From contig NC_043008.1 in NCBI RefSeq assembly GCF_006345805.1, positions 9,176,001 through 9,240,000 on the forward strand: a stretch of 64,000 nucleotides of DNA, read 5' to 3'. Made by a program: the position numbers and the translations under genes. The notes beneath the pieces were generated by a model. That model saw only the letters and a program-made list of their open reading frames with translations. It searched no databases and was not told the DNA's origin. How positions within the stretch are numbered: position 1 is the first letter of the stretch; each line of letters begins with the position of its first letter. The DNA is from Octopus sinensis (lineage: Eukaryota). This document shows, piece by piece, positions 3,721 to 55,300 of the stretch.

Positions 3721-4736
3721 ATTAATTAAAATATATTAAAAGAAAACATGTAGTCTATTGAAGATGAGTAAGTAAAGAATTGCAGGTACTGTATGGAAAT
3801 AAAACTTGGGAGGTGAGTGTGTGGTGCAGTTTTGCATTTGTGTGTAAAATTGTGAATTTATTTCAAGCCCTACAGTGTCACCCAAACGTTTTGCACCGTC
3901 TAAGAATATACAGTACAGTAGAAACTTCACAGTTCTTTACATATTGTTGGGGGGGGGGGTCTTGGAAAGTAACACCTGCGATACTCAAGGGATTACTATA
4001 TATATATATGTTATGTATACTGAAAGTGTGCTTGCACGAGGAATTTTGACAAATTATAACATATAATGATGAGACACGTGTTATTTGTCTCTGAATTATA
4101 AGTTAGTTGTTAAAGCGGGTTACTGATGAAAATTTGCCTAGCAAATTATCTTATTTGCTAATGAAATTTTAAACCTAGGTATAACCGCAAAAAATAACGA
4201 GGTAAAAGTTTTTATTTTTCATTTTCTTCAAAAATTGGTCTTAAATGTGGTTTTGGTCATCTTGGCTGCTTCTTCTAGTGTGTAAAAATTACCTGTTAAA
4301 GGGTAGTTTTCTCTTGTGTTTAATTGTACACTATTTTATATTGTGTATATATATATAAATATATAAATATCTATGTATGTAAGTATGTATATATATATAT
4401 AGACTTAGATCCAATCTGACTGCATGGCATCTTGGGCAAGAGACATTTTACTACAGACTCAGATCGATGCAACCTGAGTAAACCAACGGATGGATTGTAA
4501 CTGCAAGTCAAAGATCCACACCTGTGTAACACACTGCCATGGTAACTCTCCCCGAAAGTTACCTTAAGTATACACACACACCTGTGAAATACTCAGCCAC
4601 TTATAAGCTAAGCTAATTCAATGAACAGTTTCAGTTGATCTAACAGCTGAAACCTTTGAAAATCCTGTAATCCATTTATTTCTTTTATATATATATATAT
4701 TATATATATATACATATATATATATGTATGTATGTT

Positions 4737-11960: not shown

Positions 11961-14900
11961 TAGAATGAAGTAGTGAAAACAGCTTTCAGGATTTGGGCCC
12001 TCAAGACGAGTAGGATTTGGGCCCTCAAGATGAGTAGATGTTCATTTCAATCCTCCATATATTATATAAATAAAAATTTGATTGAGAGAAACCATGACTG
12101 AATGAAAGACAAAGCAAAACAAATTTGTTCAAAGATTATGTTGGAGATGTTTATAAAGCACAAAGTATACCTATTTCTTTACTATCCACAAGGGGCTAAA
12201 CACAGAAAGGACAGACAAACAGATTAAGTCGATTATATCGACCCCGAAAGGATGAAAGGCAAAGTTGACCTCGGCGGAATTTGAACTCAGAATGTAATGG
12301 CAGATGAAATACCATTACGCATTTCGCCCGGCACGCTAATATTTCTGCCAGCTCACCGCCAAACATAATGTATACCATCTGTAAAGACAGAGGCCCACAT
12401 GCAGCACTTAGGTTGTTCATAACTCGTCTTTCCTTATATCTCTCTTTTGTCTCTCCCTATGCATGTATGCGCATGTTATAGAATTGGATTTGCGCAATAA
12501 AGTAGAGCATTTCCACCATTCAGTTTCCATGATTTCTTCATTCTGGTTACAACAACTCACTATAACAGCGGTAACCAGTTACTACAGCCATAGCAACAAG
12601 CAGCCACTATAGGAATAAATAACAATTCATTGTTATACCAATAACTATATCGCTATAGCAACAGTAAATCACTATAGCAACGATCAACTCCAGTCAAAGC
12701 AAAAAGTTTATTAGAAACCATAACAATCCAACAGAACAACTGAAGCCATGGCAACATCAACCACACAACTTAGTGAAGAGACTAAGAATAACCATACCAG
12801 GTAGCAACACCCAACAACAACAACTGACTGTCAGAGCCAAAATAAATCACCACCACCAACAACAACAACTGACTGTCAGAGCCAAAATAAATCACCACCA
12901 ACAACAACAACAACAACAACAACAAGTGCTTGCAGAGTAAGTGGCAGTGACAACAATAACAAATGACCCCCCCCCCCAGCATCAAACCATCAATCTTGAC
13001 AGAGAAATTAGATTGACCACTGGTGTTGTATGCATGGTATTTTCTATCAGCAAATTTCAAATATTCAACATCGGTTTCAGTATTGCAGAAGGCGAAGGAG
13101 ATGGAGCGGAGGGCATAGGGGGTGTGGGGCGGTTGGAGGAGGAGGTGGAGGAGGAATCGGGTTATTCAGCCTGACCAACAAGATGAAAACCAATTCATCT
13201 TTACAGTCAATTAGCCAATCATCTCACGCCATACCCACCAACCTTATTTGGACAGTGTTGTCTCATTAGCACCTCATGTCAATTCAGAAATGTCAGGAGC
13301 AAGAGTGACTGAAAGGAAATTTATTGGTTTCTTTTGTGTATCAGAAGGAGGTAGGGAGAGTAAGAGAAAGAGAGAGAGAGGTACAGAGAGAGAGAGAGAG
13401 GTACACAGAGAGAGAGAGAGAGAGATAAAGCAAAAGAAAAGTGTGGGAGGTATTCCACTGTTCCAAGAAACACAGGGTAATGTCGTGGGTGAGAAGAGAT
13501 AGGGGAAGTTCAATGTTGATCAATAATTTCTTGATTTAATTTAGAGGTCAATTTGCATATAGGGTGTTTTACATGACAATACAACAGGATGCTGTGGCCT
13601 GATCTGTGACCTTTCAAAGGACCACCAGATTGGATTATTTAACATTTACATTTCCTTCTTGCGATGATGAATTGAGAAATGGTAAATTTCATTTTCATAT
13701 GTGATTCTTAGAAGGAAAACTAAAACCAGAATTTTTCATTAGGCGGTGCATGAAAAGTAACTATAGCAGCGGATGAAGATTTTATAATTAATTATTATAG
13801 AGGTACCTTTTATTTTCTTCATTCTTTTAATCTGAAGATGAGAGACTCTGCCTACAACCATTATTTCTCAACACCCATCGCGATTTTTGGCAAAGGGAAA
13901 ATTGAATGAGATTTTAACACTTTTTTTTTAATCATTTTATCATCTCTTTCATTGTTATTATAAATAATAAACTGGCGTTAAAGTGTTGTTATGTGGAGTG
14001 GAATAAATAAAGTGCTGTTCATGCTTTCAACAGAGAAGCATTACCATTCTGCATATAATAATGACCATAACAGCATCTTCAGTTGATTCATGCTCAAGAA
14101 ATAAATACATCATAAGCAGTTAAAGAAAAGATATACATACATATATATACATATATATATACATACATACATACATACATATACATATATATGCATACAT
14201 ATATAGATATATATATATATATGTATATGTATGTATGTATGTATGTATGTGTATATATATATATACACATACATACATACATATACATATATATGCATAC
14301 ATATATAGATATATATATAGACAGATAATATATCATCATCATCATCATTTTACGTCCGTTCTCCATGCTAGCATGGGTTGGACGGTTCGACCGGGGATTT
14401 GGGAAGTCAGAGGGCTGCACCAGGCTATAGTCTGATCTGGCAGTGTTTCTACATCTGGATGCCCTTCCTAACGCCAACCACTCCGTGAGTGTAGTGGGTG
14501 CTTTTTACGAGCCACCGCCACAGGTGCCAGGCGAGGCTGGCAACGGCCACGATCGGATTGGTGCTTTTTACGTGCCACCAGCACGGAAGCCAGTTGAGGC
14601 AGCGCTGGCATCGGCCACGTTCGGATGGTACTCTTTACGTGCCATACTAATATATAGATAATATATATATATTATATACCTTGTATGTGTTATATATATA
14701 TATATATATATATATAGTTTCTCTCTCTATATATATATATATATATCATCATCATCATCATCGTCATTTAACGTCCACTATAAACGACGATGATGATATA
14801 TATATATATATATACGACAGGCTTCGTTCAGTTTCCATCTGTCAAATCCGCCCACAAGGCTTTGATCGGCCCAAGACTATAGTAGAAGACACTTGCCCAA

Positions 14901-15890
14901 GGTGCCACACAGTGGGACTGAAACCCGGACCATGTGGCTGGTAAGCAAGCTACTTACCACACAGGCCACTCCTGCATGTAGCTGCTTAGTCCAGGCTGCC
15001 ATACATAAAAACATGAGCAGGAAATAATTTATAATTAATTGAAATTACAGCTCAAACGAGAATTACCAAAGATCAGCCTCACTCTCTGTTTCTGCATATC
15101 ACAATCAAAACGAATCGATTAAAATGTCCTGCAGTTCTCTCCCCTGTTTTTCTGAGAACAAGAAATTCATTAATGCTAATGATGTTTCTTTCATTAGGGT
15201 TGCAATTTCAATTAATTAATTTTTAGTTAATTAATTGAAACTTAATTTTAAATTATTTTTCACTCACCACTTCAAATACGATAACCTGTATTCAGCTATA
15301 TGCACGCACACACACACATACACACACACACATGCACACACGCACACACACACACACACACACACTCAAACACACACACATACATGAATCATCATCATCA
15401 CTTTTAAATCTGCTATTTCCATGCTGACACAGACTAGACAGCTACTTCTTGCACCAGTATTCTACAACTGGGTGCTCTTCCTGATGCCAACCTTTACTAG
15501 TTTTCAAATAAGACGAAAGTTCTGGAAGTACTGCTTGTATTTACATTTTGTTGGGTTTTTTTTGTTGTTATTTTTTTTTGTACACCACATGAATGAATGT
15601 CACTGCAGCCCAAACAGTGCCGGTGAAGAGGGATGCAGAGTGAGCACTTACACACACATGCGTCTGTGCACATGTGTGTGTGTGTGTATGTGTGTGTGTT
15701 TATGTGTGTGTGTATACATTATATATATATATCACCGTGACCGACCAGGCTATCAGATGTTGTTACACATCGCTGGTCAAAATGCGCTTCGCATTGTTTT
15801 AGCCTTCAAATGACGCCACCCCGCTGGCTAAGCGAGCAGGCCATATATATATATATATATGCATATATATAAATATGTATGTATGTATAT

Positions 15891-17777: not shown

Positions 17778-18215
17778 AGTTCTTTTTATCACAGGTTTTG
17801 TTGGAACACCTGGAGTCTTGAATTCATAGCAGGCTTGCTACCTGCACCCTATGGTACCATGCTATCCATTCTTTACAGTTATCTAATACTTTCCTGATTA
17901 TTCTGGTCGTGCCAAGGAGACAAACCTTTTGGAACAGTTCTACTGGGCATTCTATTCCTATTTCCTTTATATTCCTCTTGATGCCTTCTGATACTGTTCC
18001 CAAAGACCCGCCAATAACTGGCACTATCTTCACCTTCTTCATTTCCCATAGCAGGGCTATTTCATATTTAAGAGGGTTGTATCTATCTACTTTTTTGCTT
18101 TCTTTCTTGACCATTCGTGGGTCAAAGGGACATGCAACTTCAACTATACGGCATGTGTGGTGCACCTTGAGCACCACCACCAGATCGCAAGACCCTTAAA
18201 GCCAAGAACTTTTCA
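17776..18215 (-). mobile_element. 3' fragment of an RLE-type non-LTR retrotransposon (R4/Dong-like)
   Basis: CDLVVVLK...IVEVACPFD...KVDRYNPLKYEIALLW...VPVIGGSLG...LFQKVCLLGTTRIIRKVL is typical of the restriction-like endonuclease C-terminus; followed by a short UTR and (TAA)n. Confidence 0.8.
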
Positions 18216-27048: not shown

Positions 27049-29429
27049 GATAAAAATAATAATGATAAAATGAAATTAATCTAGAATAAACCTATTTATA
27101 GTGTACTGTCTCCTTGAGTGAAATTCTATGGCCACACAAATAGAACAGCCTTAGATTGAAGAAAATGTTTCCAGCCAAATGACCATTTTTGGAAAATCTG
27201 GTCTCAGCTTATAATAATCTAAATAAAGAAGGACGGAAAGCAATAGGAGGGGCGTTAGAATTAAGAGGGTAAAAGAATTTCTAAGAACATAAACCAAGAT
27301 TTCACTTCAAAGATCTTATCATTTTTCCTTTTATCTTCTAGTAGTCTCGGTCGTTCGACTGCAGCCATGCTGGAGCACCACATTAGGGAATTTCAAGCCT
27401 GGTATTTATTGTCAGTCTCTTCTGCCAAACTACTAAGTTACAGGGACATAAACAAACCAGCACCAGTTGTCAAGTGGTGGGGGGAAGGGAACAAATAGAC
27501 ACACAGACACATACATACACACATATATACAACGGGCTTCTTTCAGTTTCCATCTACCAAATCCACCCACAAGGCTTTGGTTGGCCCAAGGCTATAGTAG
27601 AAGACATGTGCCACACAGTAGGACTGAACCCAGAACCATGTAGTTGGAAAGTAAGCTTCTTACCACACAGCCATGCCTGTGCATAAATGGTTGAATTTTT
27701 TAATAAAACCATTTAGTTCTAAATTTATCATTTATGAAATACAGTATATGTAATTTAGGTAGTATTTAATTAAAATAGCCATCTATATAACATATTCAAT
27801 GTATACACATTGTCAACAGACCACATACAGCAATATTTGTCCTGAAATAACATCTCTTATGAACTTGCGGCATTAAAAACACAAATAACAGATAAAGTTA
27901 CCCCAGCAGTGACCAGCAAGAGGGCCAGAAGCATTTTGACCTTTTTGGGCCTTTTCACAAAATAGGTGAAGGTCTAATCCATAGAAAGCAGCCAGTTACA
28001 CTCTGTAAAGGGGGTGGCAATAGGAAGGGTGTCCAAAACAGGCAATGGGGCCTTGAGCAGTGTGGCCTGTCAAGCTGTCAAACCCATGTCAGCATGGTAA
28101 ATGGATGTTAAATGATGATCATCATCATTACCATCATCACCATCATCACCATCATCAGCAGCAGCAGCAGCCGTTCAAGAATTTGGATCTGGAGATCTCC
28201 ATTTCCAGCGACTTCGAGGGCCACCTCCCAGTGGTGCCGGGTGTCAACAAAGAGCCCTCGACTACAAGACGACCAAAGTTTTTTTTTCTTTCCAAGGTCT
28301 GGGGTCTCCCGCCCCTAAGCCCTAGACCATCACCTAATCACCCTTGCCTGTCTTGTTGCTTAACAACAACAAAAACAGCAGAGGTAGCAGCAGTAGAAGA
28401 GGCAGCAGCAGTGGTAGCAGCAGCAGGTAGCAGCAACAATCAGAAATTCTTATCAGAGCATGTGGCTGGCTGCAGGTAAACATCACTGAAAAGGCACAAA
28501 AAGGACAAAACACATCTGGTGTTCTCACCACCACCACCACCAGCTGCTGCTGCTGTTGCTGCTGCTGCTGGAATACCTTTTCAGCTCTAATATTTATTGT
28601 GATTTTAACACAGCAAGTCTATAAGAGATATTCATTTCAGGACAAATACAACAGTGACTGGCCTATCAGTGGTGTACGTTAATTATGTTACGTAGACAGT
28701 TGTTTATGAAAAGTATTTGAAAATATTTTAAAACATAAAATTTTAATATAAGGAACATTACTCAAAACCAGCGAGTAAATATTCAATAAGTTTGTTTATT
28801 AAAACACTGGTCAGAATATTTAAACAATCAGTATCTTGTCTGTCTATTTTATATAAGAAGTTGAATTTAAGCGTTGATATTACTTGTTTATAACACTAAA
28901 AAAAATAATAATAATTCTAAAAGGAGACATAGCAATTCTATACCGCAAAACTTAAAATTTTAAATTTTAACACTCCATCACCATCACAAACCAACTATGG
29001 AAAAAAAAAAAAACTGGTGTGATTATATATTATATATAATACATTCATTCACACAGTATCTTTCTTAAGTATACATTCATGCACACAAATATGCATACAC
29101 ACATATATATTATATATATATATATAGCAATAATGTAATATAGCAATAATATAGCAATAATATAGCAATAATATATATAGCAATATATTATATATATATA
29201 TAATATAGCAATAATGCTAAACCCTTTATGCTTAGTATTCCTTAAATTTTCCTCGAATGAGCTTTTACATGCCGAAGACTACTTGGGTAATTGATAATTA
29301 TTCCAAATTAATTAATTTCACCCTTCATTATTACGGATACTATATATATTATATAATATATATATATATATTATATATAATATATATATATATATATGTA
29401 TATATATGTTATATATATTGTATATATAT

Positions 29430-29494: not shown

Positions 29495-32400
29495 GCATAT
29501 ATATATATGTGTGGTGTGGAGGTGCAATGGCCCAGTGGTTAGGGCAGCAGACTCGCGATCGTAGAATCGCTGTTTCGATCCCCAGACCGGGCATTGTGAG
29601 TGTTTATTGAGCGAAAACACCTAAAAGCTCCACGAGGTTCCGGCAGGAGGTGGTGGTGATCCCTGCTGTTCTCTTTCGCCACAACTTTCTCTCACTCTTT
29701 CTTCTGTTGGCCTGCTCGCTTAGCCAGCGGGGTGGCGTCACTTGAAGGCTAACAACAATGCAAAGCGCATTGTGACCAGCGATGTGTAACATCTGATAGC
29801 CTGGTCGGTCACAGTGATATATATATATATATATATACTACACCCTTACACACACATATCTACATATATATATCTATATATTAAAACGCATGCATATATC
29901 TCCACATATATATGCTCATAAGCGATTGCCACAATCTCCCATAAATTCAAGTCAGCCTGACATTTACATATATAATTATCTTAGTCTATAAATTCACACA
30001 CAATAAACAATACATATTCTTTAGCATGGACATAGATTTATCAAATATTTATACGAAGGTGTCAGCAAGTTTGCAGTTCATCTTTTATTTTATAAATATT
30101 TTCCATACATTTCAATAAGTTTACAATTACAAGGTTTATCTTTGTTTTTGTTTTTTGCTTTTTTGGGTTTTTTTTTTTTTCAGATAACAAATTCAACCAT
30201 TAGATCATTAAAGTGAGATGTAAATTCATATTCTTAATAAAATTGCCACCTTCTTAATAAGCACAATAACATCTTTCTTTCTTTCGTTGTATCAATTATA
30301 AATCGATACAAAATAATATTCCAAATGTGTTCATTTTGACAGATAATGTTTTATTCAAAATTTTTGTTTTTGTTTTTCTATTGTTATAAGAACTTTCTCA
30401 CAAGGACGAGCTACAGTGTAATAAATTGGTAAGTCTTCTTTCAGTATTGGTAAGTCATTTTAGTGTATTTTAAAACTAAAACAATGAATATTTAAATTAA
30501 ACTACTTCCAAAAAATAAAGGTTTAAATATATATTTAAACCAATATGGAAGGACAGACTTAATTCATAGAGAGATGCTTTTGTAATGTCCCCTTCTAACA
30601 GATACACAGGGGCAGGCATGGCTGTGCGATAAGAATCTTGCTTCCCAACCACATGGTTCTGGGTTCAGTCCCACTGCATGGCACCTTGGGCAAGTGGGTT
30701 CTGTTATAGCCTCAGGCCAACTATAGCCTTGGGAGTGGATTTGATAGATGGAAACTGTAAGAAGACCATCATATATCATCATCATCACAATCATCATCAT
30801 CATCATCATATAGCATCTGCTTTCTATGCTGGCATGAGTTGGACAGTTTGACTAGAAGTGGTAAAGCCAGAGGGCTGCACCAGACTCCAGTCTGATTTGG
30901 CATGGGTTCTACAGCTGGATGCCCTTCCTAACACCAACCACTCCAAGAGCGTAGTGTATGCTTTATACATGCCACATGTTTGTGTATGTGGTTTTGTCCC
31001 CCACCACAGCTTGATAACCAGTGTTTGTGTGTTTATGTCCCCAGAACTTAGCAATTCAGCAAAAGAAACTGATAGAATAAGCAGCAGGCTTAAAAAGAGA
31101 AAAAGCATAGATTTGTTTATGTCACTGCAACTTAATTCATACAAAAGGGCTTTTGTAATGTCCCCTTCAAACAGATACACAAGAACAGGCGTGGCTGTGT
31201 GGTAAGAAGCTTGCTTCCCAACCACATAGTATGGGTTCAGTCCTACTGCATGGCAATTTGGGCAAGTGTCTTCTGCTATGGCCTCGGGCCAACCAAAGCC
31301 TTGGAATGTACATATATATATATCATCATCATCGTTTAGCGTCCGCTTTCCATGCTAGCATGGGTTGGACAGTTCAACTGGGGTCTGGGAAACCAGAAGG
31401 CTGCACCAGGCCCAGTCTGATCTGGCAATGTTTCTATGGCTGGATGCCCTTCCTAACGCCAACCACTCCGTGAGTGTAGTGGGTGCTTCTTACGTGCCAC
31501 CGGCACAGGTGCCAGACGAGGCTGGCAAACGGCCACAATCGGATAGTGCTTTTTATGTGCCACCGGCATAATAATAATAATAATAATAATAATATGAGGG
31601 AATAATATTCCAAACTTACAGGGAAAAATTCAATTTAGAAATACTAAATCAAATTTCACAAAATATGATATATATATGGGTTATTTGTTGTTATTTTTTA
31701 TTATTTCAGTGAAAACATATTTTGAATATTTTACTAAGTTTTCAGGTGTTGACATTAAGAGTTCTTTCTATATATATATATATAAATATATATACATATA
31801 TATTTCTTTAGGTATAATTTGTTTGAATTTATATTTGGTGATTATTGTGGTTGCTTCTGAAGTTTGTAAGACTCACAGCATAGGTACCTGGCTTGAAAAA
31901 AAGAAGCACCTGAGGTTGATTCATTCGACTAAAAATTCTTCAAAGCAGTGCCCCATGGTCGCAGTCTAATGACAGAAACAAGTACAAGATAGATATTTAA
32001 AAGTATTTTCAAACACACTTTGTAAATAATAACTACGTTGATTAAATAAAGCGTTTTTAAAACAGATCTAATTAGATCCTTTAAGTGAAGTGTTTTGATT
32101 TTTATTCTTACTTACACCACAACTCATTCTTAATAACTACCACACACTCCACTTCCGTGTTTCCCTTTTTGCCTTGTTTCTCTTATAAATTGATACAAAA
32201 TAATATTTTAAATCTGATTATTCTAACAAATAATGTTTTTCTTCTGTCTGGATTCCTCAGAAACCATATTTTTATATGTGCCGTTCTGTTATTTTCTTTC
32301 AAAAAGCAAAAAAAAAAATGATTTGTATAAATACGATGAAAACTGATTATCTAAATAGTTTGAGCTCTGATAAAACGGGGAAATAACTGGCCAGCCTCAA

Positions 32401-32850: not shown

Positions 32851-33276
32851 TATATATATAATATATATAGATATATGTATGTTTACATATTATACATACA
32901 TAATATATTATATATATATATATATTATAGAAAAAAAGGTTTGAAAATGCAATTTAAACGATGTGTTTATTTACTTAACCGGTTTCACTCTTTGGTAAAA
33001 GATTGTCAAAAGTTACATTAAGGGAAACATTGAATAATATGGGTTCAAAAATCATTCATGCATAAAGGGAAGTATACCACCAATTGGCTACTTCCTCGTT
33101 CTCTCAGTTTCCAGCCTTTATAATACCAACAGGTCAGTAAAAACATATTCTCGCCTTGTACTTAAAATATTCTGAGATGTATAAAAAATCCATTTTAATT
33201 TTGCTGTTCAAAAGGCTGTATATATATACCGAGATTGTATATATATACATGTAATGTGACAATTTGCGACAACCAA

Positions 33277-33376
33277 NNNNNNNNNNNNNNNNNNNNNNNN
33301 NNNNNNNNNNNNNNNNNNNNNNNNNNNNNNNNNNNNNNNNNNNNNNNNNNNNNNNNNNNNNNNNNNNNNNNNNNNN
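33277..33376. other. Assembly gap (100 N)
   Basis: Run of N. Confidence 1.
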
Positions 33377-33519
33377 TCATCGTTTAACGTCCGTTTTTCC
33401 GGGTTGGGACGGTTCGACGGGGTAAGGGAAGCCAGGGGCTGCTCCAGGCTCCAGTCTGATCTGGCAGAGTTTCTACGGCTGGATGCCCTTCCTAACGTAT
33501 ATGTATATATATATATATA

Positions 33520-35419
33520 ATATATATATGCACACAAATATGCATACATATATATATATATATGTATATATATATGTATATCTATATATTATATGTGTGT
33601 GTGTGGAGGTGCAATGGCCCAGTGGTTAGGGCAGCAGACTTGCGATCGTAGAATCGCTGTTTCGATCCCCAGACCAGGCATTGTGAGTGTTTAGTGAGGT
33701 TCCGGCACGGGGGTGGTAGTGATCCCTGCTGTGCTCTTTCGCCACAACTTTCTCTCACTATTTCTTCTGTTGGCCTGCTCGCTTAGCCAGCGGGGGTGGC
33801 GTCATTGAAGCTAAAAACAATGCAAACGCATTGTGACCAGCGAGGTGACCATCTGATAGCCTAGTCGGTCACAGTGATATATATATATATATATATACAC
33901 ACACACCAACACATATATAACATATTATATATATATACTATACCCTTACACACACATATCTACATATATATCTATATATTAAAAACGCATGCATATATCT
34001 CCACATATATATGCTCATAAGCGATTGCCACAACTCTCCCATAAATTCAAGTCAGCCTGACATTTACATATATAATTATCTTAGTCTATAAATTCACACA
34101 CAATAAACAATACATATTCTTTAGCATGGACATAGATTTATCAAATATTTATACGAAGGTTGTCAGCAAAGTTTGCAGTTCATCTTTTATTTTATAAATA
34201 TTTTCCATACATTTCAATAAGTTTACAATTACAAGGTTTATCTTTGTTTTTGTTTTTGCTTTTTTTGGGTTTTTTTTTTTTTTTCAGATAACAAATTTCA
34301 AACATTAGATCATTAAAGTGAGATGTAAATTCATATTCTTAATAAAATTGCCACCTTCTTAATAAGCACAATAACATCTTTCTTTCTTTCGTTGTATCAA
34401 TTATAAAGAGACTACAAAATAATATTCCAAATGTGTTCATTTGACAGATAATGTTTTATTCAAAATTGTTTTTTGTTTTTCTATTGTTATAAGAACTTCT
34501 CACAAGGACGAGCTACAGTGTATAAAATTGGTAAGTCTTCTTTCAGTATTGGTAAGTCATTTTAGTGTGGTTTTAAAACTAAAACAATGAATATTTAAAT
34601 TAAACTACTTCCAAAAAATAAAGGTTTAAATATATATTTAAACCAATATGGAAGGACAGACTTAATTCGTAGAGAGATGCTTTTGTAATGTCCCCTTCTA
34701 ACAGATACACAGGGGCAGGCATGGCTGTGCGATAAGAATCTTGCTTCCCAACCACATGGTTCTGGGTTCAGTCCCACTGCATGGCACCTTGGGCAAGTGT
34801 GTTCTGTTATAGCCTCAGGCCAACTATAGCCTTGAGAGTGGATTTGATAGATGGAAACTGTAAGAAGACCATCATATATCATCATCATCACAATCATCAT
34901 CATCATCATCATCATATAGCATCTGCTTTCTATGCTGGCATGAGTTGGACAGTTTGACTAGAAGTGGTAAAGCCAGAGGGCTGCACCAGACTCCAGTCTG
35001 ATTTGGCATGGGTTCTACAGCTGGATGCCCTTCCTAACACCAACCACTCCAAGAGCACAGTGGGTGCTTTATACATGCCACATGTTTGTGTATGTGGTTT
35101 TGTCCCCCACCACAGCTTGATAACCAGTGTTTGTGTGTTTATGTCCCCAGAACTTAGCAATTCGGCAAAAGGAACTGATAGAATAAGCAGCGGGCTTAAA
35201 AAGAGAAAAAGCATAGAATTGTTTATGTCACTGCAACTTAACTCATACAAAGGGGCTTTTGTAATGTCCCCTTCTAACAGATACACAGGAGCAGGCATAG
35301 CTGTGTGGTAAGAAGCTTGCTTCCCAACCACATGGTTCTGGGTTCAGTCCCACAGCATGGCACTTTGGGAAAGTGTCTTCTGCTATAGCCCCAGGCCAAC
35401 CAAAGCCTTGGAAAGTACA

Positions 35420-40182: not shown

Positions 40183-40375
40183 CTGTGGATGTACTGAATG
40201 ATCAGCAGCAAAACTCTGGAACTTGAACGGAATGTGTATTACTTCCTTGGGTCTCATCAGTATCTGCTTCCATTTTCCATCCACATTGCTCTCAATAAAC
40301 ATATCCTCTTCCACTGGGGTGGTCACATTGGTCTGTGACTTGAAATACCTCCATTCTTGAGCATCAGTTATAACG
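40183..40375 (-). CDS. NPHP4: Nephrocystin-4 exon (SVITDAQEWRYFKSQTNVTTPVEEDMF...LMRPKEVIHIPFKFQSFAADHSVHPQ)
   Basis: Acceptor ctttttaaccttag, donor cag|gtaagt; 193 nt, phase 2-0. Resembles human SVIVDSQEWRDFK...TPVEEDMF...LRPHETAHVPFKFQSF. Confidence 0.93.
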
Positions 40376-41193
40376 CTAAGGTTAAAAAGAAAAACAAGAG
40401 ATGGTATGACCATTATTGTCATCATCACCATCACCATCATCAGTATTCTATTTTCATTTGTTGATGTTATTTAACTGCAGGTCAGCCATGACCAAGCAGA
40501 TCTGATCCCTTATACAAAGAAAGTATAAAATGTCCCTAGACCGGTGTGTCTCTTTCATGAACCCCCTGTGGGACCTCACTCTGCTCCTTGCACTGGATGT
40601 TATGCCAGTCTATCACAGTTACTTTTTGCAATGGGTACAACTGAAAAAGAGCTTGGTAAACTTAGGAAATACGAGTTGATTTTACAGTGCTGTTGGTTAA
40701 AGCAGGGAATTATTCCTACACTGTAGTCCTTATTTATAGCCATGTAACCTGGGCCAAATAAAAGTCAAGTTTCCTTCCAACATACACACTGGTAATGAGA
40801 GGATATAAACTGCTCTCCTCTTAAATAGATGTTACAGCTGATTGACTCAGCTACTTATGCTCTCCTACAGAAAATTACAGCCAACTCATCTGGTACAGTG
40901 CATCTAGGGTAGTACACACAGGTTCTAAAAATACTGTCTGATAAGTATACCTATTTCTTTACTAGCCACAAGAGGCTAAACACAGAGAGGACAAACAAGG
41001 ACAGACAAACTGATTAAGTCGATTACATCGACCCCAGGGCATAACTGGTACTTATTTAATTGACCCCAGAAGGATGAAAGGCAAAGTCGACCTCGGTGGA
41101 ATTTGAACTCAGAATGTAACAGCAGACAAAATACCACTAAGCATTTCGCCTAGCGTGCTAACATTTCTGCTAGCTCGCCGCCTTTACATGTGT

Positions 41194-41663
41194 AAGTATA
41201 TCTTTACACGCTGAAAGAGAAGGCATATGTGTGGTGGCTGGAGGTGCTGGAAATAGCTCCCATATACCCATATGTTCACACCCTGCTTTCTACAAAAAGG
41301 AAGGATACATATGTATTCAGAATTATGCAGTACTGAATAATTTAATCAAAGATTAAAATGATAAAGACTTGAACAACTTTTGATCTGTCCAATCAGATAT
41401 ATCTAGGACTAGAATAACAACCATCACCTGACCATCCAAACATGTTGTTCCCTCTCCGACTCTTTTGCAGCTACTCCAATTATATTTATGTGAGAGCTCT
41501 TTAATCTTTGATTAAATTATTCAGTTCTACATAATTCTGAATACATATGTATCCTTCCTGTTTGTAGATAGCAGGTTGTGAGCAGATGGGTATATGGCAG
41601 CTATTTCTAGCACCTCTAGCCACCACATATATGCCTTCTCTTTCAGTGTATAAAGGTAAACTT
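41194..41663. repeat. Long inverted repeat (164-bp arms, ~142-bp spacer), MITE/foldback-like
   Basis: Manual ungapped alignment of 41194-41357 with the reverse complement of 41500-41663 gives 15 mismatches (~91% identity). Confidence 0.92.
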
Positions 41664-43213
41664 TTAGTTTTTCTCTCTTCTTTTCTTTCTTGCAAGTTAC
41701 ATGCTGTCTTCCCTAGTGCTGGTGGCATGGAAAAAGCTCCCAGTACATTCTGTAAAATGGTTGGCACATGGAAGGATATCAAGCAAAAGAAACCATTCCA
41801 AAGATGACACTGGAGCTCAATGCAGCCCTGCAGCCTGCTTGTTCCTTCTCAAACTATCCAGCTTGGGAAGCAGACATCAGAAGAGGATGATGATGTTTTT
41901 CATCTTCCAAATTATTCCAAGTTTGTTCCTCACACTCCCCAAAAAATACTAGACAGAACATTTTTTTTTTAAGTCTTTCTCCTTAACCAAAATCATAAGG
42001 GACTCTCTTCCCACACCTGATGCTCAGGTTTTCCTTTCCAACTGACTACCAACACTTTATATGAAGATTATTCACATCAGCATATCATGTTAACAATATG
42101 TCACATTACAGCACACAGCAGATGTTCATCCGTTCTATCCATGGATTAATATTGCTGTAAGATTTATATTGAGTTAAAACCCAAGTTAAAGTATCCGATC
42201 AACAACTTGAATAACCAAGATTTTGAATCTCCTTAGAATATCTCCAAGCTGTTAAAATTGTGTTCTCTTGGTCAAAGTGTATACAGGTAATGACATTAGT
42301 CACTCTGCCTGCTGAAAATAGCAGTCAAATTTTCCTGAAATAACACCAACTGAATACTATCTGAGATATATGATGCAGGAGAGAAAAAAAAAAGGTGGGA
42401 TGGTCATGATGGAACGATTTTGATCACATCTGCTCAGCAGTGGTCAACCTAGAGCTATAACTTTAGCTTGTCGTCTACAACATCTATTTAAATTAGACCT
42501 GAAGTTAATTATGAATGCAGAAACGAAGTGATTTAAGTGGCTTCTATTTTCTTTTTGAATTTTAGAGTAAAAAAATTGAATATTTTCACTTAAATCATTG
42601 GAAGAATTCACAGGAAGATAGTGATTAAGAAGTTCTCCTTCTTTGTCGTGTTAACCACTTAAGTGTGGATTTAGATTGGTATGTCTCATACACTGGTGAA
42701 ATCTGACAGAAGCAGAGTATTGATTTTTATAGACGTAGGAGTGTCTTTGTGGTAAGTAGCTTGCTTACCAACCACATGGTTCCGGGTTCAGTCCCACTGT
42801 GTGGCACCTTGGGCAAGTGTCTTCTACTATAGCCTCGGGCCGACCAAAGCCTTGTGAGTGGATTTGGTAGACAGAAACTGAAAGAAGCCCGTCGTATATA
42901 TGTGTATATATTTAATTTTCATCTGTCTTGCCCGCATTTTCGTTCTGGTGTCCGCTGAATTTTCCTCTAGAGAACATTCTTTTCTTTGTAGTTTGATCAT
43001 AGGTGATCTACTTCTAGCATATGGCCGACCACATAGTGGCTTGCCCTCTAAATATACATATATATACAAAGAGCAATAAAGATTCAAGTTAATTTTAAAA
43101 AATTTACTTGAATATGGTACCTAACTTAGATGCACCAAAAAAAACTATACTGATTTAACAATACAGTAATGTGGGGTGATTATAAGCGAGAAAGAAGCAA
43201 CAAGAATGGATAG

Positions 43214-43309
43214 GTATTTAGTACGATCGTTTCATACAAGGACAGGTTTTATTAAAAGTTGCAAAGATTACAGCATATAAACGAGTCCCGTACTCATCAG
43301 CTAAAATAC
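43214..43309 (-). ncRNA. Type I hammerhead ribozyme, sense orientation in an NPHP4 intron
   Basis: GUAUUUUAG-CUGAUGA-GUACGGGAC(41 nt)GUCCUUGUAU-GAAAC-GAUC-GUA^CUAAAUAC: full conserved core, 8-bp stem I with one bulge, ~9-bp stem II, palindromic stem III ACGAUCGU. Confidence 0.8.
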
Positions 43310-43953
43310 ATGTAAGTTCTCTAGACATCCTAGTGTTTGAGGCTATACTCACGAAGTAATGTAGATAATTAAACAGATTTCTAAAGTTCATTAAAGTTCT
43401 TTAAAGATGATGTACAGTCTTATCACAGAATTTTAAAAAAGTTTTGATAGCATCACAGAGAAGGTGACCTAATCCATATGAATTTCCATAGAATGATGAG
43501 GGATTATATACTCACAGAAGACAAATTTATCCATTGTTAATTACAACGAGGTGGGTCTCAATTCTGCTATTAGCATTACAGAGAGGGTGAATTAATCCTT
43601 GTATATATGCACAGATTCCAATGGTGTAGATGTAATTTCCAGAGAAATGGAGATGAATTTCATATTCACAGGCGATAAATTTACAATGGTTGAACACAAT
43701 GAGGTAGGTATCAATCCTTGTTATATGATTAGGTGTTTGCCACATTAATCACATTACTGCTATCACAAGAGGCTGTAGCTATTTAACTCTTAAAGGCTGA
43801 AGGGCTTACATATATATATATAAGTCAAAAATATCTCATACAGTTTTAAAACAACAACCTATGGACACTCACCATACATTACAATATATGAACCACAATG
43901 GACAAATAAACTTTATTTTAAGAAAAAATAGTTCTCTACTTCTACAAGACATA

Positions 43954-44472
43954 CTGTAAATCCTCAAGTATAATCCACATTTTCCCCCAAAAATTTAAAG
44001 GTCAAAATCCCTAGTGCGTACTATATACAACGTTAAACATGAAAAATATTTTCTAAGCAATGTCCGAGTCTCTATTTGCTGTCTGGCAATGTTTATTCAG
44101 ATGCATTTTGTGATGTCGAGCACGAAAATACCTTAAGCTAAGCCTGAAAGCAATGAAGTCATAAAAGATTCATCCATTACTTACAGTAAGCAACATTTAT
44201 TAAAATAAAAGTATTCAGAACACAGAATAACATGTAACAAAAACAATTTGCAAACATATTTACATTCCCATATAACAGTTAAGAACACCATTATTGTATT
44301 ACGCATGCGCAGAATTGTTTGTTTGACTAGGTGCTGCTGGCTTAATTACGCACGACTCAAGTTAGAGAAGGAATCCCAATTATACACAAGATTTAGGTCT
44401 TTCAGAAGTACAGCTGCCTAAAAATCCCATGTGTATTATACTCAAGGGCAGACTATACTCGAGGATTTACGG
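43954..44472. mobile_element. Tc1/mariner-pogo-type MITE, 519 bp
   Basis: ta|ctgtaaatcctcaagtata ... tatactcgaggatttacgg|ta: 19-bp TIR with 2 mismatches, TA TSD. Confidence 0.8.
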
Positions 44473-44599
44473 TACATAGATTAGACACATACTGTGGAAT
44501 AAGCCTAGTATACCAAACCATTTTCAAAGATACCATAGCATACCAAACCAAAGATAGCAAACCGAAGCAAAGATAAAACAGCATTAAATGTATGCTTAC

Positions 44600-44914: not shown

Positions 44915-45323
44915 TCTTTACTCTTTCACTTGTTTCAGTCATTTGACTGCGGCCATGCTGGAGCACCGCCTTTAGTCGAGCAAATCGACCCCAGGACTTA
45001 TTCATCGTAAGCCTAGTACTTATTCTATCGGTCTCTTTTGCCAAACCACTAAGTTACGGGGACGTAAACACACCAGCATCGGTTGTCAAGCGATGTTGGG
45101 GCGACAAACACAGACACACAAACATATACACACATATACACATATATATACATATATACGACAGGCTTCTTTCTGTTTCCGTCTACCAAATCCACTCACA
45201 AGGCTTTGGTCAGCCCGAGGCTATAGTAGAAGACACTTGCCCAAGGTGCCATGCAGTGGGAACGAACCCGAAACTCTGTGGTTGTTAAGCAAGCTACTTA
45301 CCACACAGTCACTCCTGCACCTA
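44915..45323 (-). mobile_element. Composite tRNA-derived SINE (head gtggctgtgtggtaag..., body ...ccttgggcaagtgtcttctactatagcc..., tail ...gactgaaacaagtaaaagag). Many copies, e.g. ~14815, 16310, 18792, 27345, 36770, 42735, 49155, 49755, 52830, 60150.
   Basis: Recurrent near-identical blocks in both orientations. Confidence 0.85.
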
Positions 45324-45774
45324 TATATTTAATTTTTTCAAAATTCTTTTATTCTCTTTTGCTGTCTTTTGACTATTTACAATAATAACTTCATAAATCG
45401 ATGCAAAATGTCTTTAAGTGCATAACAATTGCTCCAATATAAAAATCACAATTTATGATCTGATGGTCAGTAGTCCAGCACCTTGATTGAATGGTCAGTG
45501 GGATTTTATATGCGAACAATTTCCAAAGAAAAATATTGATGAAAAGATTGAGATCAGAGAGGAAGACATTGTATTCAAAAGACAGGATGGATCTTGCAGA
45601 ATGCTCTGGTGATTTCTTTGAAAAGTCTTCGTAATAATATTGTTCAAGAACGTCTCTCTGACAGGCCTGGCATTAATGTGTTTGCTAAATAAATACGTAG
45701 GAATATCCAAAGAGGCAGTCTTTGTTCTCCCAACAGTACTAATAAGACAATGTAAACAGGTGCACACATGCACA

Positions 45775-49029: not shown

Positions 49030-49720
49030 GATGACTTCATTGTACACAGTGCTCAGGTGCATTACAACTCGCAAGGAAAACTAATGAAAACTGCATGAAC
49101 AGTATATAGGATATGCACACGAAGTGAACAGGGAATGAGTCTTAAAATGAAACAGGCGTAGGAGTGGCTGTGTGGTAAGTAGCTTGCTTATGAACCACAT
49201 GGTTCTGGGTTTAGTCCCACTGTGTGGCACCTTGGGCAAGTGTCTTCTACTATAGCCTCAGGCCGACCAAAACCTTGTGAGTGGATTTGGTAGATGGAAA
49301 CTGAAAGAAGCCCGTCGTATATATATATATATGTGTATGTGTGTGTATATGTTTGTGTGTCTGTGTTTGTCCCCCCAACATCGCTTGACAACCGATGCTG
49401 GTGTGTTTATGTCCCCGTAACCTAGCGGTTTGGCAAAAAGACCGATAGAATAAGTACTAGGCTTACGAAGAATAAGTCCGAGGGTCGATTTGCTCGACTA
49501 AAGGTGGTGCTCCAGCATGGCCACAGTCAAATGACTGAAACAAGTAAAAGAGTAGAAGAAAAACAGTGGTGGGAACCATCAGGTGTGCTGTTGGTGAATT
49601 TCAGGAAGCATGGAAGTTTTGAAGGATGCGGTGTACTGACAGCAAGCAAGTGATGTGGGTCGTTTATTCCATGCTTCAGCGACTCTGAACATGAAAAAGT
49701 GTTTCTCAAAGTCATGGGTG
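49030..49720 (-). mobile_element. L2/CR1-type LINE 3' fragment interrupted by a SINE. Related 3' ends at 55157-55390 and 57376-57610 (+) with (ATT)n tails.
   Basis: KHFFMFRVAEAWNKRP...SFK resembles the terminal FF..RV...WN.LP motif; tgcacctgagcactgta(t/c)acaa is shared with the other two copies. Confidence 0.65.
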
Positions 49721-52319: not shown

Positions 52320-55300
52320 GTCTACATAGGTACAAAGTCACACATTTTGTGGAAGAGGCAGCCAGAGCTTAAACAGATCCAGCAAAACATTGCAAGACAT
52401 TTATTTTATTCACGGTTTTGGCAGGTGCAATAAAATGGGCTCTCAGGAATTTCCCAACCCCTGACTTATAGTAACTATAATAATAAGGATCAATGAAAGA
52501 ACAAACTATCGCAACAAGTCATATTCAAAAGAATAACCATAACCACTGTAACAAATATGACAGATGTTCTCTTCTACTCTAGGCACAAGGCCTGAATTTT
52601 TGGGGGAGGGGGGGCAGTCGATTAGATCGATCCCAGTATGCAACTGGTACTTAATTTATCCTTTTCTACTCAAGGCACAAAGTCCGAAATTTTGGAGGTA
52701 GGGGCAGTCGATTAGATCAATCCCAGTATGCAACTGGTACTTAATCTCTTGACCCCGAAAGGATGAAAGGCAAAGTTGACCTCAGTGGAATTTGAACTCA
52801 GAATATAAAGACAAACGAAAACAAATATGACAAGGAGTTGCTGTGTGGTAAGTAGCTTGCTTACCAACCACATGGTTCTGGGTTCAGTCCCACTGCATGG
52901 CACCTTGGGCAAGTGTCTTCTTCTATAGCCTCGCGCCAACCAAAGCCTTGTGAGTGGATTTGGTAGGCAGAAACTGAAAAGAAGCCCATCATCATCATCA
53001 TCATCGTTTAGCGTCCGCTTTCCATGCTAGCATGGGTTGGACGGTTCTACTGGGGTCTGTGAAGCCAGAAGGCTTCATCAGGCCCAGTCAAATCTGGCAG
53101 TGTTTCTACGGCTGGATGCCCTTCCTAACGCCAACCACTCCGTGAGTGTAGTGGGTGCTTTTTACGTGCCACCCGCACAGGTGCCAAACAGAGCTGGTTA
53201 ACGGCCACGAACGGATGGTGCTTTTTATGTGCCACCGACACAAGGGCCAGGCGAGGCTGGCAACGGACACGAACGGATGGTGCTTTTTACGTGCCATCGG
53301 CACGAGGCAGTCGGGGTGGTGCTGGCAACGGTCGCGAAACGGAAGGTTCTCTTACATGCCACCAGCACTGGTAACACATCTGCAATTTCCATTGATCGAT
53401 TTCGATTCTGATCCTCATAGATATATCCATCATAGATATGTATATATATATATATATATATATCTGTGTGTGTGTGTGTGTATGTATGTTTGTGTGTCTG
53501 TGTTTGTCCCCCTAGCATTGCCTGACAACCGATGCTGGTGTGTTTACGTCCCCGTAACTTAGCGGTTCGGCCAGAGAGACCGATGGAATAAGTACTAGGC
53601 TTACAAAGAATAAGTCCTGGAGTCGATTTGCTCGACTAAATGTGGTGCTCCAGCATGGCCACAGTCAAATGACTGAAACAAGTAAAAGAGTAAAGAGTAA
53701 TGTGATGTATCAGACTGGGGTCTGGTGCAGCTCCTCTGCTTACCAGTTCCAATCAGCCCATCTAACCCATGCCATGGAAAAAACACTAAATGATTATAAA
53801 TTACTATTTTTAAATCGCACAATGAGAGATATTCAGCAACAGTACTTTGTAGTAAAGATTGTTTGCCAACATAATATGGCAGTCCTGGTTTAGGAGTCCT
53901 GGTTCAAGAGTAGGAGAGAAAAGTTTGTGTATTTTAAAAGGAAATAGATCAGTGAGGGCACTTACTTGAAGGTGCCATCAGAATAAATGCAATGGTTTGT
54001 CTTGCGTTGCTAAGGGGCTTCAACTCCTGATGAAGGTACATAGAGGTACCCTCAGGACATGGAGCATCATCATCATAACAATCAGATATCTTCATGGTAT
54101 ATAGTATGTCTTAGGTACCATTTTAGATATGGCATGGTCCATCCATGTCCAGATCTGACTATAACCAATTCCTTGTAGAAGGAAAAACAGAGAGGGAGGG
54201 GGAAGAGAGAGAGACAGTGAGAAAGAAAGAGAGACAGAGAGAGAGAAAGACAGTGAGAGAGGCAGACAGACAGACAGAGAGAAAGAGAGACAGAGAAAGA
54301 CAGTGAGAGAGACAGACAGAGAGAAAGAGAGACAGAGAAAGACAGACAGAGAGAAAGACAGTGAGAGAAACAGAGAGAGAAACAGAGACAGACAGACAGA
54401 AAAAGAGAAAAAGGAAAAAAGAAAAAGAAAGGAAAAAAGAAAAAGAAAGGAAAAAAGAGAGAAAGAAAGAAGTACAGGACTGGTACTTTATGAAAGGTAG
54501 AGTCGATCTTGATGGCATTTGAACCTGGAATGGAGACAACCAGGACGACGTATACCACATGATAATCCCTCCAAAGCTCTCATGATGTGCTCACCTCTCC
54601 ATCATATCCGTCTTGACAGATGATCACCATTTTGCCAAGTACATTAGGGTTTTATGCTTTGTTGAAGAGCTTTCTATACTTACCATATTAATTCAAATAA
54701 CATTGGTTTTAAATTTTGGCACAAGGCCAGCAATACTGGGAGAGGGGGTTAAGTCAATTCCATCAACCCCAGTATTCGACTGGTACCTAGTAAAGCAAAG
54801 TCAATCCCAGCAGAATTTGAACTCAGAATGTGAAGATGGATGAAATGCCGCTAAACATCTTACCCAGGGTGCTAACGATTCTGCCAACTCACTTCTTTTA
54901 ATTGAATTGATATTAGTTTCAAACCTCTGAGTGAAATTCTTAGTGTTATTTGTCTGTCTTTACGTTCTGAGTTCAAATTCCACTGAGGTCAACTTTGCCT
55001 TTCATCCTTCTGAGGTCAATAAATTAAGTACCAGTTGATCTGGCACCCCACCCCCACTCCCCAAAAATTTCGGGCCTTGTGCCTAGAGTAGAAAAGAATA
55101 TTAGTCTCAAACATTAGCAAAAGGCCAGCAGGTTTGAGGCAAGGGGCTAAGTTGTTAGTTGTCGGAGCACTGCATCCTTCAAAACTTCCATGCTTCCTGA
55201 GACTCGCCAACACTACTCCACCTGATTTTCTGCCCTCCATACACACACAAGCATGTATCTGACTCATACATTATTCACTTTCCAGACATTTGTACATTAC

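What the first reader, a model, noticed from the sequence alone, without database searches (positions are those of the whole stretch)
43214..43309. Near-canonical hammerhead ribozyme in the sense strand of an NPHP4 intron
Seen: the minus strand (NPHP4 pre-mRNA sense) reads GUAUUUUAG CUGAUGA GUACGGGAC-[41 nt]-GUCCUUGUAU GAAAC GAUC GUA^CUAAAUAC. All core nucleotides are present (C3-A9, G12-A15.1, NUH=GUA). Stem I is 8 bp with one bulge. Stem II is ~9 bp and can extend into the insert (GUUUAU/AUAAAAC). Stem III is the palindrome ACGAUCGU. The 10.1-11.1 pair is G.U, one CpG-type transition from the canonical G-C. The predicted cut (43222/43221) lies ~1.4 kb after the donor at 44599 and ~2.8 kb before the acceptor at 40376. 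Known: type I HHRs with palindromic stem III occur in Penelope-like elements and non-LTR retrozymes, and conserved intronic HHRs exist in amniote genes. Inference: this copy could cleave the nascent NPHP4 transcript co-transcriptionally and affect splicing or expression of a ciliary transition-zone gene, i.e. a mobile ribozyme positioned as a potential host regulator.
Basis: partly seen in the sequence, partly recalled or inferred. Interest (0 to 1): 0.82.

Follow-up and report, generated by a model that had tools for sequence, protein, structure and literature searches.

The report
Solitary hammerhead ribozyme relic in intron
A 96-base stretch inside an intron of a ciliary gene (NPHP4-like) carries every conserved base and all three stems of a hammerhead self-cutting RNA, but it looks like a stranded leftover of a mobile element, and nothing shows that it regulates its host gene.

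Summary
The minus strand 43309→43214 has CUGAUGA, GAAA and a GUA cleavage triplet. Helix I is 8 bp with one bulge. Helix II is 9 bp with one bulge around a 41-nt insert. Helix III is the palindrome ACGAUCGU. It lies in sense orientation in a verified 4224-nt intron.

It is the only such motif in the window. Chance expectation is 2.5e-5 to 8e-4 per window, which scales to about 1–30 per 2.7-Gb genome. So it is significant locally but not beyond chance genome-wide.

Its helix III form (GAAAC + 4-nt palindrome + GUH) is the one seen in validated mollusc, coral and axolotl retrozyme hammerheads. However, Rfam and a covariance model built from those validated ribozymes both miss it. It has G·U at the conserved 10.1–11.1 pair and no recognisable loop1/loop2 contacts. 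It has no partner copy, no tandem repeat and no Penelope ORF nearby.

Orthologous introns could not be obtained, so conservation is untested.

Best reading: a solitary Penelope/retrozyme-type hammerhead relic, probably weak or inactive. A host regulatory role is unsupported. This is an ordinary kind of find in animal genomes that carry Penelope-like elements. Interest is low.

The parts
43214..43309 (-). whole hammerhead-like motif (type I topology), 96 nt
43301..43309 (-). helix I, 5' strand GUAUUUUAG (one bulged U)
43294..43300 (-). core C3-A9, CUGAUGA
43285..43293 (-). helix II, 5' strand GUACGGGAC (G10.1 first)
43244..43284 (-). 41-nt A/U-rich insert capping helix II; essentially unstructured (-1.4 kcal/mol alone)
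43234..43243 (-). helix II, 3' strand GUCCUUGUAU (bulged U; U11.1 last, giving G.U at 10.1-11.1)
43230..43233 (-). core G12 A13 A14 A15.1 (GAAA)
43223..43230 (-). helix III, perfect palindrome ACGAUCGU (as a monomer, 2 bp plus a GAUC loop; in a dimer, an 8-bp intermolecular helix at -10 kcal/mol)
43222..43222 (-). A17; predicted scissile bond between 43222 and 43221
43214..43221 (-). helix I, 3' strand CUAAAUAC
40376..44599 (-). host intron (4224 nt), GT...AG, of an NPHP4-like gene; the motif lies 1377 nt after the donor and 2845 nt before the acceptor

Best explanation
The site is a solitary, sense-oriented hammerhead motif of the metazoan type I kind. It is most likely the stranded remnant of a Penelope-like-element pLTR or a non-LTR retrozyme monomer that inserted into this intron. 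In its parent element the ribozyme would have cut multimeric element transcripts. Cutting would occur as a monomer helped by loop-loop contacts, or as a double hammerhead formed through the palindromic helix III of two tandem copies. Here it is alone. It carries a G.U in place of the conserved G10.1-C11.1 pair, which fits CpG decay. It has a long, loosely structured helix II cap instead of a canonical loop 2, and an A/U-rich helix I. I infer that it cleaves the NPHP4 pre-mRNA slowly or not at all, and that it has no host function. Shown: the motif, its uniqueness in the window, its position and orientation, and the absence of partner copies and element ORFs. Inferred: the mobile-element origin, the low activity and the lack of function.
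For: All core bases and three helices are present, and it is the only such site in the window. The chance expectation is 2.5e-5 to 8e-4 per window. Helix III has the form GAAAC-[palindromic tetraloop]-GUH found in validated retrozyme hammerheads of coral, mussel and axolotl. The mussel ACGCGCGU differs only in the two central bases, and both motifs share CUGAUGAGU. The literature describes long helix II, bulged nucleotides, palindromic 15.2-16.2 with loop 3, mostly solitary dispersed copies and low in vitro activity for PLE hammerheads (PMC4209133). A cephalopod genome has 235 Rfam Hammerhead_1 hits (PMC6962438). In Xenopus, about 44% of retrozyme-homologous sequences overlap introns, and monomers are dispersed (bioRxiv 10.64898/2026.07.22.740005). 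CpG observed/expected is 1.41 in the motif, against 0.34 in the intron and 0.2-0.36 in the flanks. This fits inserted rather than background sequence. Two further hammerhead-like relics lie in the same window. One at 4113-4190(+) has the same architecture but U at position 12. One at 28480-28522(+) scores 22.7 bits against a model built from validated retrozyme hammerheads, while the control DNA maximum was 13.1 bits. No partner copy or tandem repeat exists.
Against: No family of related copies could be shown, so origin from an element is inferred rather than demonstrated. No RT or GIY-YIG remnant and no pLTR-like repeat flank the motif. Rfam hammerhead models and my model R1 do not detect it. 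Genome-wide, about one chance motif of this quality is expected. Low activity is not shown. The nearest-neighbour 'probability of the hammerhead fold' (6e-6) lies within the range I obtained for experimentally active hammerheads (3e-6 to 2e-3), so folding energetics do not discriminate. A 2-bp helix III with a tetraloop is compatible with monomeric activity in invertebrate retrozymes.
Confidence: 0.65

Rival explanations
1. Chance occurrence. An A/U-rich intron happens to contain CUGAUGA and GAAA at a suitable spacing, with enough A-U and G-U pairing to draw three helices. It has no ribozyme ancestry.
For: The Markov-1 simulation expects about 1 (all features) to about 34 (any helix III) such sites per 2.7-Gb genome. 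Helix I is mostly A-U, and folding is no better than for shuffled sequence (z -1.09 for the motif, -0.36 for 291 nt). No covariance model detects it. No related copy was found anywhere. Perreault et al. warn that consensus matches arise by chance in large databases (PMC3088659).
Against: The per-window expectation is only 2.5e-5 to 8e-4. The perfect 8-nt palindromic helix III with C15.2-G16.2 is the specific hallmark of metazoan retrozyme and PLE hammerheads. The motif is locally CpG-rich. Two more hammerhead-like relics lie in the same 64 kb, against 0.073 'strong' sites expected.
Confidence: 0.2
2. Active, host-retained intronic ribozyme. The motif self-cleaves the nascent NPHP4 pre-mRNA and thereby tunes splicing or expression. 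This is the reader's proposal, by analogy with the amniote intronic hammerheads and the CPEB3 ribozyme.
For: The motif is in sense orientation, in mid-intron, with an intact catalytic core. Four CpGs are retained in a CpG-poor intron. A helix III of 2 bp plus a tetraloop supports monomeric cleavage in invertebrate retrozymes. There is precedent for intronic ribozymes competing with co-transcriptional splicing (PMC10919898; PMC6155905).
Against: No conservation evidence could be obtained. The most conserved pair is G.U. No canonical loop1-loop2 contacts can be identified, and these raise activity by orders of magnitude at physiological Mg2+. PLE-type hammerheads show no monomer activity and low dimer activity in vitro. 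Slow hammerheads in introns do not impair splicing. Only about 2.8 kb remains to the acceptor, which is roughly a minute of transcription. Retrozyme sequences are depleted from introns, which suggests selection against them rather than for them.
Confidence: 0.05
3. Intron-encoded C/D box snoRNA. UGAUGA would be the C box next to a terminal stem.
For: There are weak cmscan matches to C/D snoRNA families (Afu_294 at 14.2 bits, E 4.6; sR35 at 11.5 bits). The location is intronic and in sense orientation, with a terminal stem.
Against: All scores are far below the gathering thresholds (43-60 bits). No CUGA D box lies next to the 3' strand of the terminal stem. The matches are driven by UGAUGA alone.
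Confidence: 0.01

Closest known systems
Type I hammerheads of metazoan non-LTR retrozymes (e.g. Mytilus Mg353, Acropora Amil224, axolotl Ax353/Ax330; PMC7229834)
   Same: Type I topology and the CUGAUGA...GAAA core. Helix III is A15.1-U16.1 and C15.2-G16.2 capped by a 4-nt palindrome (mussel ACGCGCGU, axolotl ACACGUGU, here ACGAUCGU). The cleavage triplet is GUA, as in Ax353. G10.1 and U10.2 match the mussel motif. The context has low G+C.
   Different: Helix II is 9 bp plus a 41-nt cap, instead of 4 bp plus a 5-6-nt loop 2. There is no recognisable loop 1 or loop 2. The 10.1-11.1 pair is G.U. The motif is not in a 150-400-bp tandem repeat. It is not detected by a covariance model built from those four ribozymes.
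Minimal/variant hammerheads of Penelope-like elements (Cervera & de la Pena 2014, PMC4209133)
   Same: Longer than usual helix II, bulged nucleotides in the helices, palindromic 15.2-16.2 with loop 3, high sequence variability, mostly solitary dispersed copies, and expected low monomer activity.
   Different: No PLE ORF or pLTR adjoins it. Helix I is 8 bp rather than 4-5 bp. There is no unpaired nucleotide between A9 and 10.1. G10.1-C11.1 is not kept. No family members were available for comparison.
Conserved intronic hammerheads of amniotes (RECK, CTCL, DTNB; Rfam HH9/HH10)
   Same: A sense-strand type I hammerhead inside an intron of a protein-coding gene, thought to derive from retroelement ribozymes.
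   Different: The amniote motifs are canonical, are detected by covariance models, and are deeply conserved. Here there is no model hit and no conservation evidence.
CPEB3 HDV-like intronic ribozyme
   Different: It belongs to a different ribozyme class, and it has a measured rate (t1/2 2-3 min) and in vivo effects (PMC10919898). Nothing comparable is known here.

Membership tests
Hammerhead ribozyme (type I) | Conserved core C3 U4 G5 A6 N7 G8 A9 ... G12 A13 A14 | tested here: met
   CUGAUGA at 43300-43294 and GAAA at 43233-43230
Hammerhead ribozyme (type I) | A15.1-U16.1 pair followed by H17 (NUH cleavage triplet) | tested here: met
   A at 43230 pairs with U at 43223; A17 at 43222; the triplet is GUA
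Hammerhead ribozyme (type I) | Three helices around the core, with open ends in helix I | tested here: met
   Helix I is 8 bp with a bulge, helix II is 9 bp with a bulge, and helix III is 2 bp plus a tetraloop (or an 8-nt palindrome)
Hammerhead ribozyme (type I) | G10.1-C11.1, the most conserved stem pair | tested here: not met
   The pair is G.U. The pair is described as highly conserved, although U.U variants are active.
Hammerhead ribozyme (type I) | Match to curated covariance models (Rfam Hammerhead_1/3/II/HH9/HH10) | tested here: not met
   No hit at gathering thresholds or at E<=10 in 42900-43600. The 41-nt insert in helix II probably accounts for much of the penalty, but I could not test a trimmed sequence.
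Hammerhead ribozyme (type I) | Loop 1-loop 2 tertiary contacts needed for activity at physiological Mg2+ | tested here: inconclusive
   No canonical loops are present. Single bulged U residues lie 5 bp (helix I) and 4 bp (helix II) from the core. Whether they interact cannot be judged from sequence.
Hammerhead ribozyme (type I) | Predicted accessibility of the hammerhead fold | tested here: inconclusive
   P(fold) is 6e-6 against 3e-6 to 2e-3 for four validated hammerheads. Helix I pair probability is 0.215 in isolation and 0.03 or less in context, against 0.44-0.93 for the validated set.
Hammerhead ribozyme (type I) | Site-specific Mg2+-dependent self-cleavage | not testable with these tools
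   Needs in vitro transcription and a cleavage assay
Metazoan non-LTR retrozyme | Tandem repeats of about 150-400 bp, each with a hammerhead | tested here: not met
   Region 43100-43500 is single copy in the window, with no tandem or direct repeats and no second motif. It could still be a dispersed monomer.
Metazoan non-LTR retrozyme | Helix III of 1-2 bp capped by a 2-4-nt palindromic loop | tested here: met
   ACGAUCGU; compare the validated sequences and the description
Metazoan non-LTR retrozyme | Similarity to validated retrozyme hammerheads under a covariance model | tested here: not met
   Model R1 gives only fragments of 7.5 bits or less in 43100-43420, even with filters off
Penelope-like element (pLTR hammerhead) | Adjacent RT / GIY-YIG ORF or its remnants | tested here: not met
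   No such ORF in the window. Pfam scan of the three sense frames of 42912-44599 found nothing relevant.
Penelope-like element (pLTR hammerhead) | Flanking direct repeats (pLTRs) carrying the motif twice | tested here: not met
Domesticated intronic ribozyme | Conservation at the orthologous intron position with stem covariation | not testable with these tools
   No orthologous intron sequence could be reached. The only related contig (L001, 85.5% identical) covers the downstream exon only. Protein-probe searches over the motif found nothing.
C/D box snoRNA | C box plus a D box (CUGA) adjoining a terminal stem | tested here: not met
   No CUGA next to the 3' strand of the stem. Rfam snoRNA matches have E>4.

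The most novel reading that the evidence does not exclude
This is a working hammerhead with an unusual long helix II cap that has been kept in the sense strand of the NPHP4 intron of octopods. There it cleaves nascent pre-mRNA, possibly only when two transcripts or a trans partner pair through the palindromic helix III, and so sets the output of a ciliary transition-zone gene. It would be the first domesticated intronic hammerhead outside amniotes.
Probability: 0.03. Interest if true: 0.7.

Novelty: new member of a known kind. Interest (0 to 1): 0.2.

Why it matters
If it is what it most likely is, it adds one more dispersed hammerhead relic to the thousands already described in animals that carry Penelope-like elements and retrozymes, many of them in introns. 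Its only special points are the long helix II cap, which hides it from covariance models, and its sense orientation in a ciliopathy-gene orthologue. It would matter only if it proved to be conserved and active. In that case it would extend domesticated intronic hammerheads from amniotes to cephalopods. It would also give a tractable case of ribozyme cleavage competing with splicing.

Tried and rejected
1. Rfam at gathering thresholds and at E<=10 found no hammerhead at any of the three sites.

2. I looked for copies in the window by self-BLAST and repeat finding. The motif region is single copy, and only a neighbouring ~180-nt SINE is repeated.

3. I tried to reach orthologous or paralogous DNA through protein probes.
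- An exon probe found only short Logan contigs. The best (L001, 85.5% nucleotide identity) does not reach the motif.
- The spurious 57-aa ORF over the motif is not on record and has no homologues.
- A six-frame probe of 43090-43800 gave no hit.

4. Exact-pattern scans of metagenome and viral contigs gave only chance matches without the helices.

5. A Pfam scan of the sense-strand frames from 42912 to the donor at 44599, covering the motif and both flanks, found no RT or GIY-YIG. The first attempt failed because of stop codons.

6. I first took the thermodynamic result as evidence against activity: P of the hammerhead fold is about 6e-6. I dropped that argument after validated active hammerheads gave 3e-6 to 2e-3 with the same measure.

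7. A covariance model built from four validated retrozyme hammerheads does not recover the candidate.

8. A rod-like retrozyme structure for the surrounding 291 nt is not supported (z -0.36).

9. The C/D snoRNA reading is rejected because there is no D box.

10. Pfam confirmation of NPHP4 with the local library failed, so the gene name rests on precomputed labels.

11. Supplements of the two key papers hold no cephalopod data.

Full report
**Observation**

I wrote a type-I hammerhead descriptor with these elements:
- CUGAUGA or CUGANGA;
- helix II starting at 10.1;
- GAAA;
- A15.1-U16.1;
- H17;
- helix I flanking both ends.

I ran it on both strands of the window. The candidate is the only hit. 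Its anatomy is:
- Helix I has 5 pairs, a bulged U on the 5' strand, then 3 pairs.
- Helix II has 7 contiguous pairs, or 4 pairs, a bulged U, then 5 pairs.
- Helix II closes a 41-nt A/U-rich cap that has almost no structure of its own (-1.4 kcal/mol).
- The segment from 15.1 to 16.1 is the perfect palindrome ACGAUCGU.

The intron boundaries are as stated: GT at 44599-44598 and AG at 40377-40376. The frame is continuous across the junction. The predicted cut at 43222/43221 lies 1377 nt after the donor and 2845 nt before the acceptor, in the sense strand. All 18 homologues of the flanking exons carry a precomputed PF26190 (Ig_NPHP4_1st) label. My own hmmscan did not reproduce it. So 'NPHP4' is likely but rests on those labels. 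I could not check the organism.

**Is it more than chance?**

I fixed CUGAUGA and drew 3 million flanks from a first-order Markov model of the window, twice.

| Criterion | Expected per 64-kb window | Scaled to a 2.7-Gb genome |
|---|---|---|
| Helices I+II of at least 17 pairs, any helix III of at least 2 bp | 8e-4 | about 34 |
| Same, with a short helix III | 1.9e-4 | about 8 |
| Same, with a fully palindromic short helix III | 2.5e-5 | about 1 |

So the motif is highly unexpected in one window. But a scan of a whole genome would meet roughly one chance look-alike. Perreault et al. make the same general warning (PMC3088659). Sequence statistics alone therefore do not settle ancestry.

**What speaks for a real ribozyme ancestry**

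- **Helix III form.** The supplement of PMC7229834 gives four experimentally cleaving retrozyme hammerheads. All have GAAAC, a 2-6-nt palindrome, then GUH:

| Source | Helix III |
|---|---|
| mussel | ACGCGCGU |
| axolotl (Ax353) | ACACGUGU |
| coral | ACAGUACUGU |
| this candidate | ACGAUCGU |

  The candidate also shares CUGAUGAGU with the mussel motif.
- **PLE features.** Cervera and de la Pena list palindromic 15.2-16.2 with loop 3, long helix II and bulged nucleotides as recurrent features of Penelope-element hammerheads. These are mostly found as solitary, highly variable copies (PMC4209133).
- **CpG content.** The motif has a CpG observed/expected ratio of 1.41. The intron has 0.34 and the flanks have 0.2-0.36. 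This suits inserted rather than background sequence.
- **Other relics in the same window.**
  - At 4113-4190 (+) there is an exact CUGAUGA and the palindrome ACCUAGGU. Helix I again has 5 bp, one bulged nucleotide on the 5' strand, then 2 bp. Helix II is long and well structured, and the element folds with z = -4.2. However, position 12 is U. The 'strong' class of my relaxed descriptor has 2 members in the window, against 0.073 expected.
  - At 28480-28522 (+) a covariance model built from the four validated ribozymes scores 22.7 bits (E about 3e-4). The maximum in 105 kb of unrelated control DNA was 13.1 bits. That copy has G8 and G12 replaced by A.
- **Background from the literature.**
  - A cephalopod genome has 235 Rfam Hammerhead_1 hits (PMC6962438).
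  - In Xenopus, about 44% of retrozyme-homologous sequences overlap introns.

**What speaks against, or is missing**

- Rfam finds no hammerhead at the site, even at E<=10.
- The model from validated retrozyme ribozymes finds only fragments there, with filters off. The 41-nt cap is a likely cause, but I could not test a trimmed sequence.
- The region is single copy in the window. There is no tandem or direct repeat and no second motif on the same strand.
- There is no RT or GIY-YIG remnant.
- The 291-nt context is no more structured than shuffled sequence.
- I could not obtain any related copy or orthologous intron.
  - The only related contig is 85.5% identical but covers the downstream exon only.
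  - Three protein-probe searches and four pattern scans found nothing.

**Would it cut?**

Folding energetics do not decide this. The hammerhead-compatible fold has an ensemble probability of 6e-6. The same measure gives 3e-6 to 2e-3 for the four validated ribozymes.

Helix I is weaker than in the validated set. Its pair probability is 0.215 in isolation and 0.03 or less in a 191-491-nt context, against 0.44-0.93 for the validated ribozymes in isolation.

A 2-bp helix III with a tetraloop supports monomeric cleavage in invertebrate retrozymes. That activity depends on loop 1-loop 2 contacts, which raise activity by orders of magnitude at low Mg2+. No such loops can be recognised here.

PLE-type motifs showed no monomer activity and low dimer activity in vitro. 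There is no second copy to form a double hammerhead in cis. The 8-bp intermolecular helix III (-10 kcal/mol) would need two transcripts to meet.

I infer weak or no cleavage. This is inference, not a result.

**Would cutting matter?**

Hammerheads placed in introns were reported not to reduce splicing, because the exons stay tethered to the polymerase. Only a fast ribozyme did reduce it (PMC2995048). The CPEB3 case works because its half-life matches the polymerase transit time to the next exon. Here only about 2.8 kb remains to the acceptor. Retrozyme sequences are depleted in introns relative to intergenic DNA. That points to selection against such insertions rather than recruitment.

**Verdict**

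The best explanation (0.65) is a stranded Penelope/retrozyme-type hammerhead relic that is probably inactive or slow. Chance remains a real rival (0.2). A host regulatory ribozyme is possible but unsupported (0.05), and a snoRNA is excluded.

This is a new member of a known kind, of low interest unless genome-wide family searches, orthologue alignments and a cleavage assay show conservation and activity.

Noticed in passing
window 4113-4190 (+): A second hammerhead-like motif, antisense to the NPHP4-like gene strand: GCGGGUUA CUGAUGA AAAUUU[33 nt]AAAUUU UAAA C CUAG G UA UAACCGC. It has the same architecture as the finding: helix I of 5 bp + 1 bulge + 2 bp, a palindromic helix III ACCUAGGU, and a long helix II. 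Position 12 is U instead of G. It folds very stably (z -4.2). It is single copy in the window, and Rfam does not detect it.
   Followed up: partly
window 28480-28522 (+): ACAUCACUGAAAAGGCACAAAAAGGACAAAACACAUCUGGUGU scores 22.7 bits (E about 3e-4) against my model of four validated retrozyme hammerheads; the control DNA maximum was 13.1 bits. It is 77% identical to the axolotl Ax330 ribozyme, with G8 and G12 changed to A. It is probably a decayed canonical type I hammerhead. It sits in the loop of a long (CAG)n/(CTG)n inverted repeat. Rfam gives no hammerhead hit.
   Followed up: partly
window 42728-42911 and about 16 other sites (e.g. 45142-45325, 49154-49332, 52833-52990, 14798-14973): A SINE-like repeat of about 180 nt is present about 17 times in both orientations, at 78-93% identity. 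One copy lies 300 nt downstream of the motif and forms a 184-nt inverted pair with a copy that lies beyond the upstream exon (45142-45325), so the pair brackets that exon and the motif.
   Followed up: no
window 30619-31303 vs 34722-35410: Near-identical ORFs and repeat hits spaced about 4.1 kb apart suggest a tandem segmental duplication of about 4.1 kb. A run of 100 N (an assembly gap) lies between them, within 33208-33549.
   Followed up: no
window 7618-8293 (+) and 17824-18180 (-): ORFs that look like transposon remnants: a mariner/HTH-type transposase fragment, and a conserved C-terminal piece seen in retroelement polyproteins. This is judged by eye only.
   Followed up: no
window 40259-40266 (-), inside the exon 40183-40375: The coding exon itself contains CUGAUGAG. 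It is one of the 7 CUGAUGA sites on the minus strand, and no hammerhead helices surround it.
   Followed up: yes
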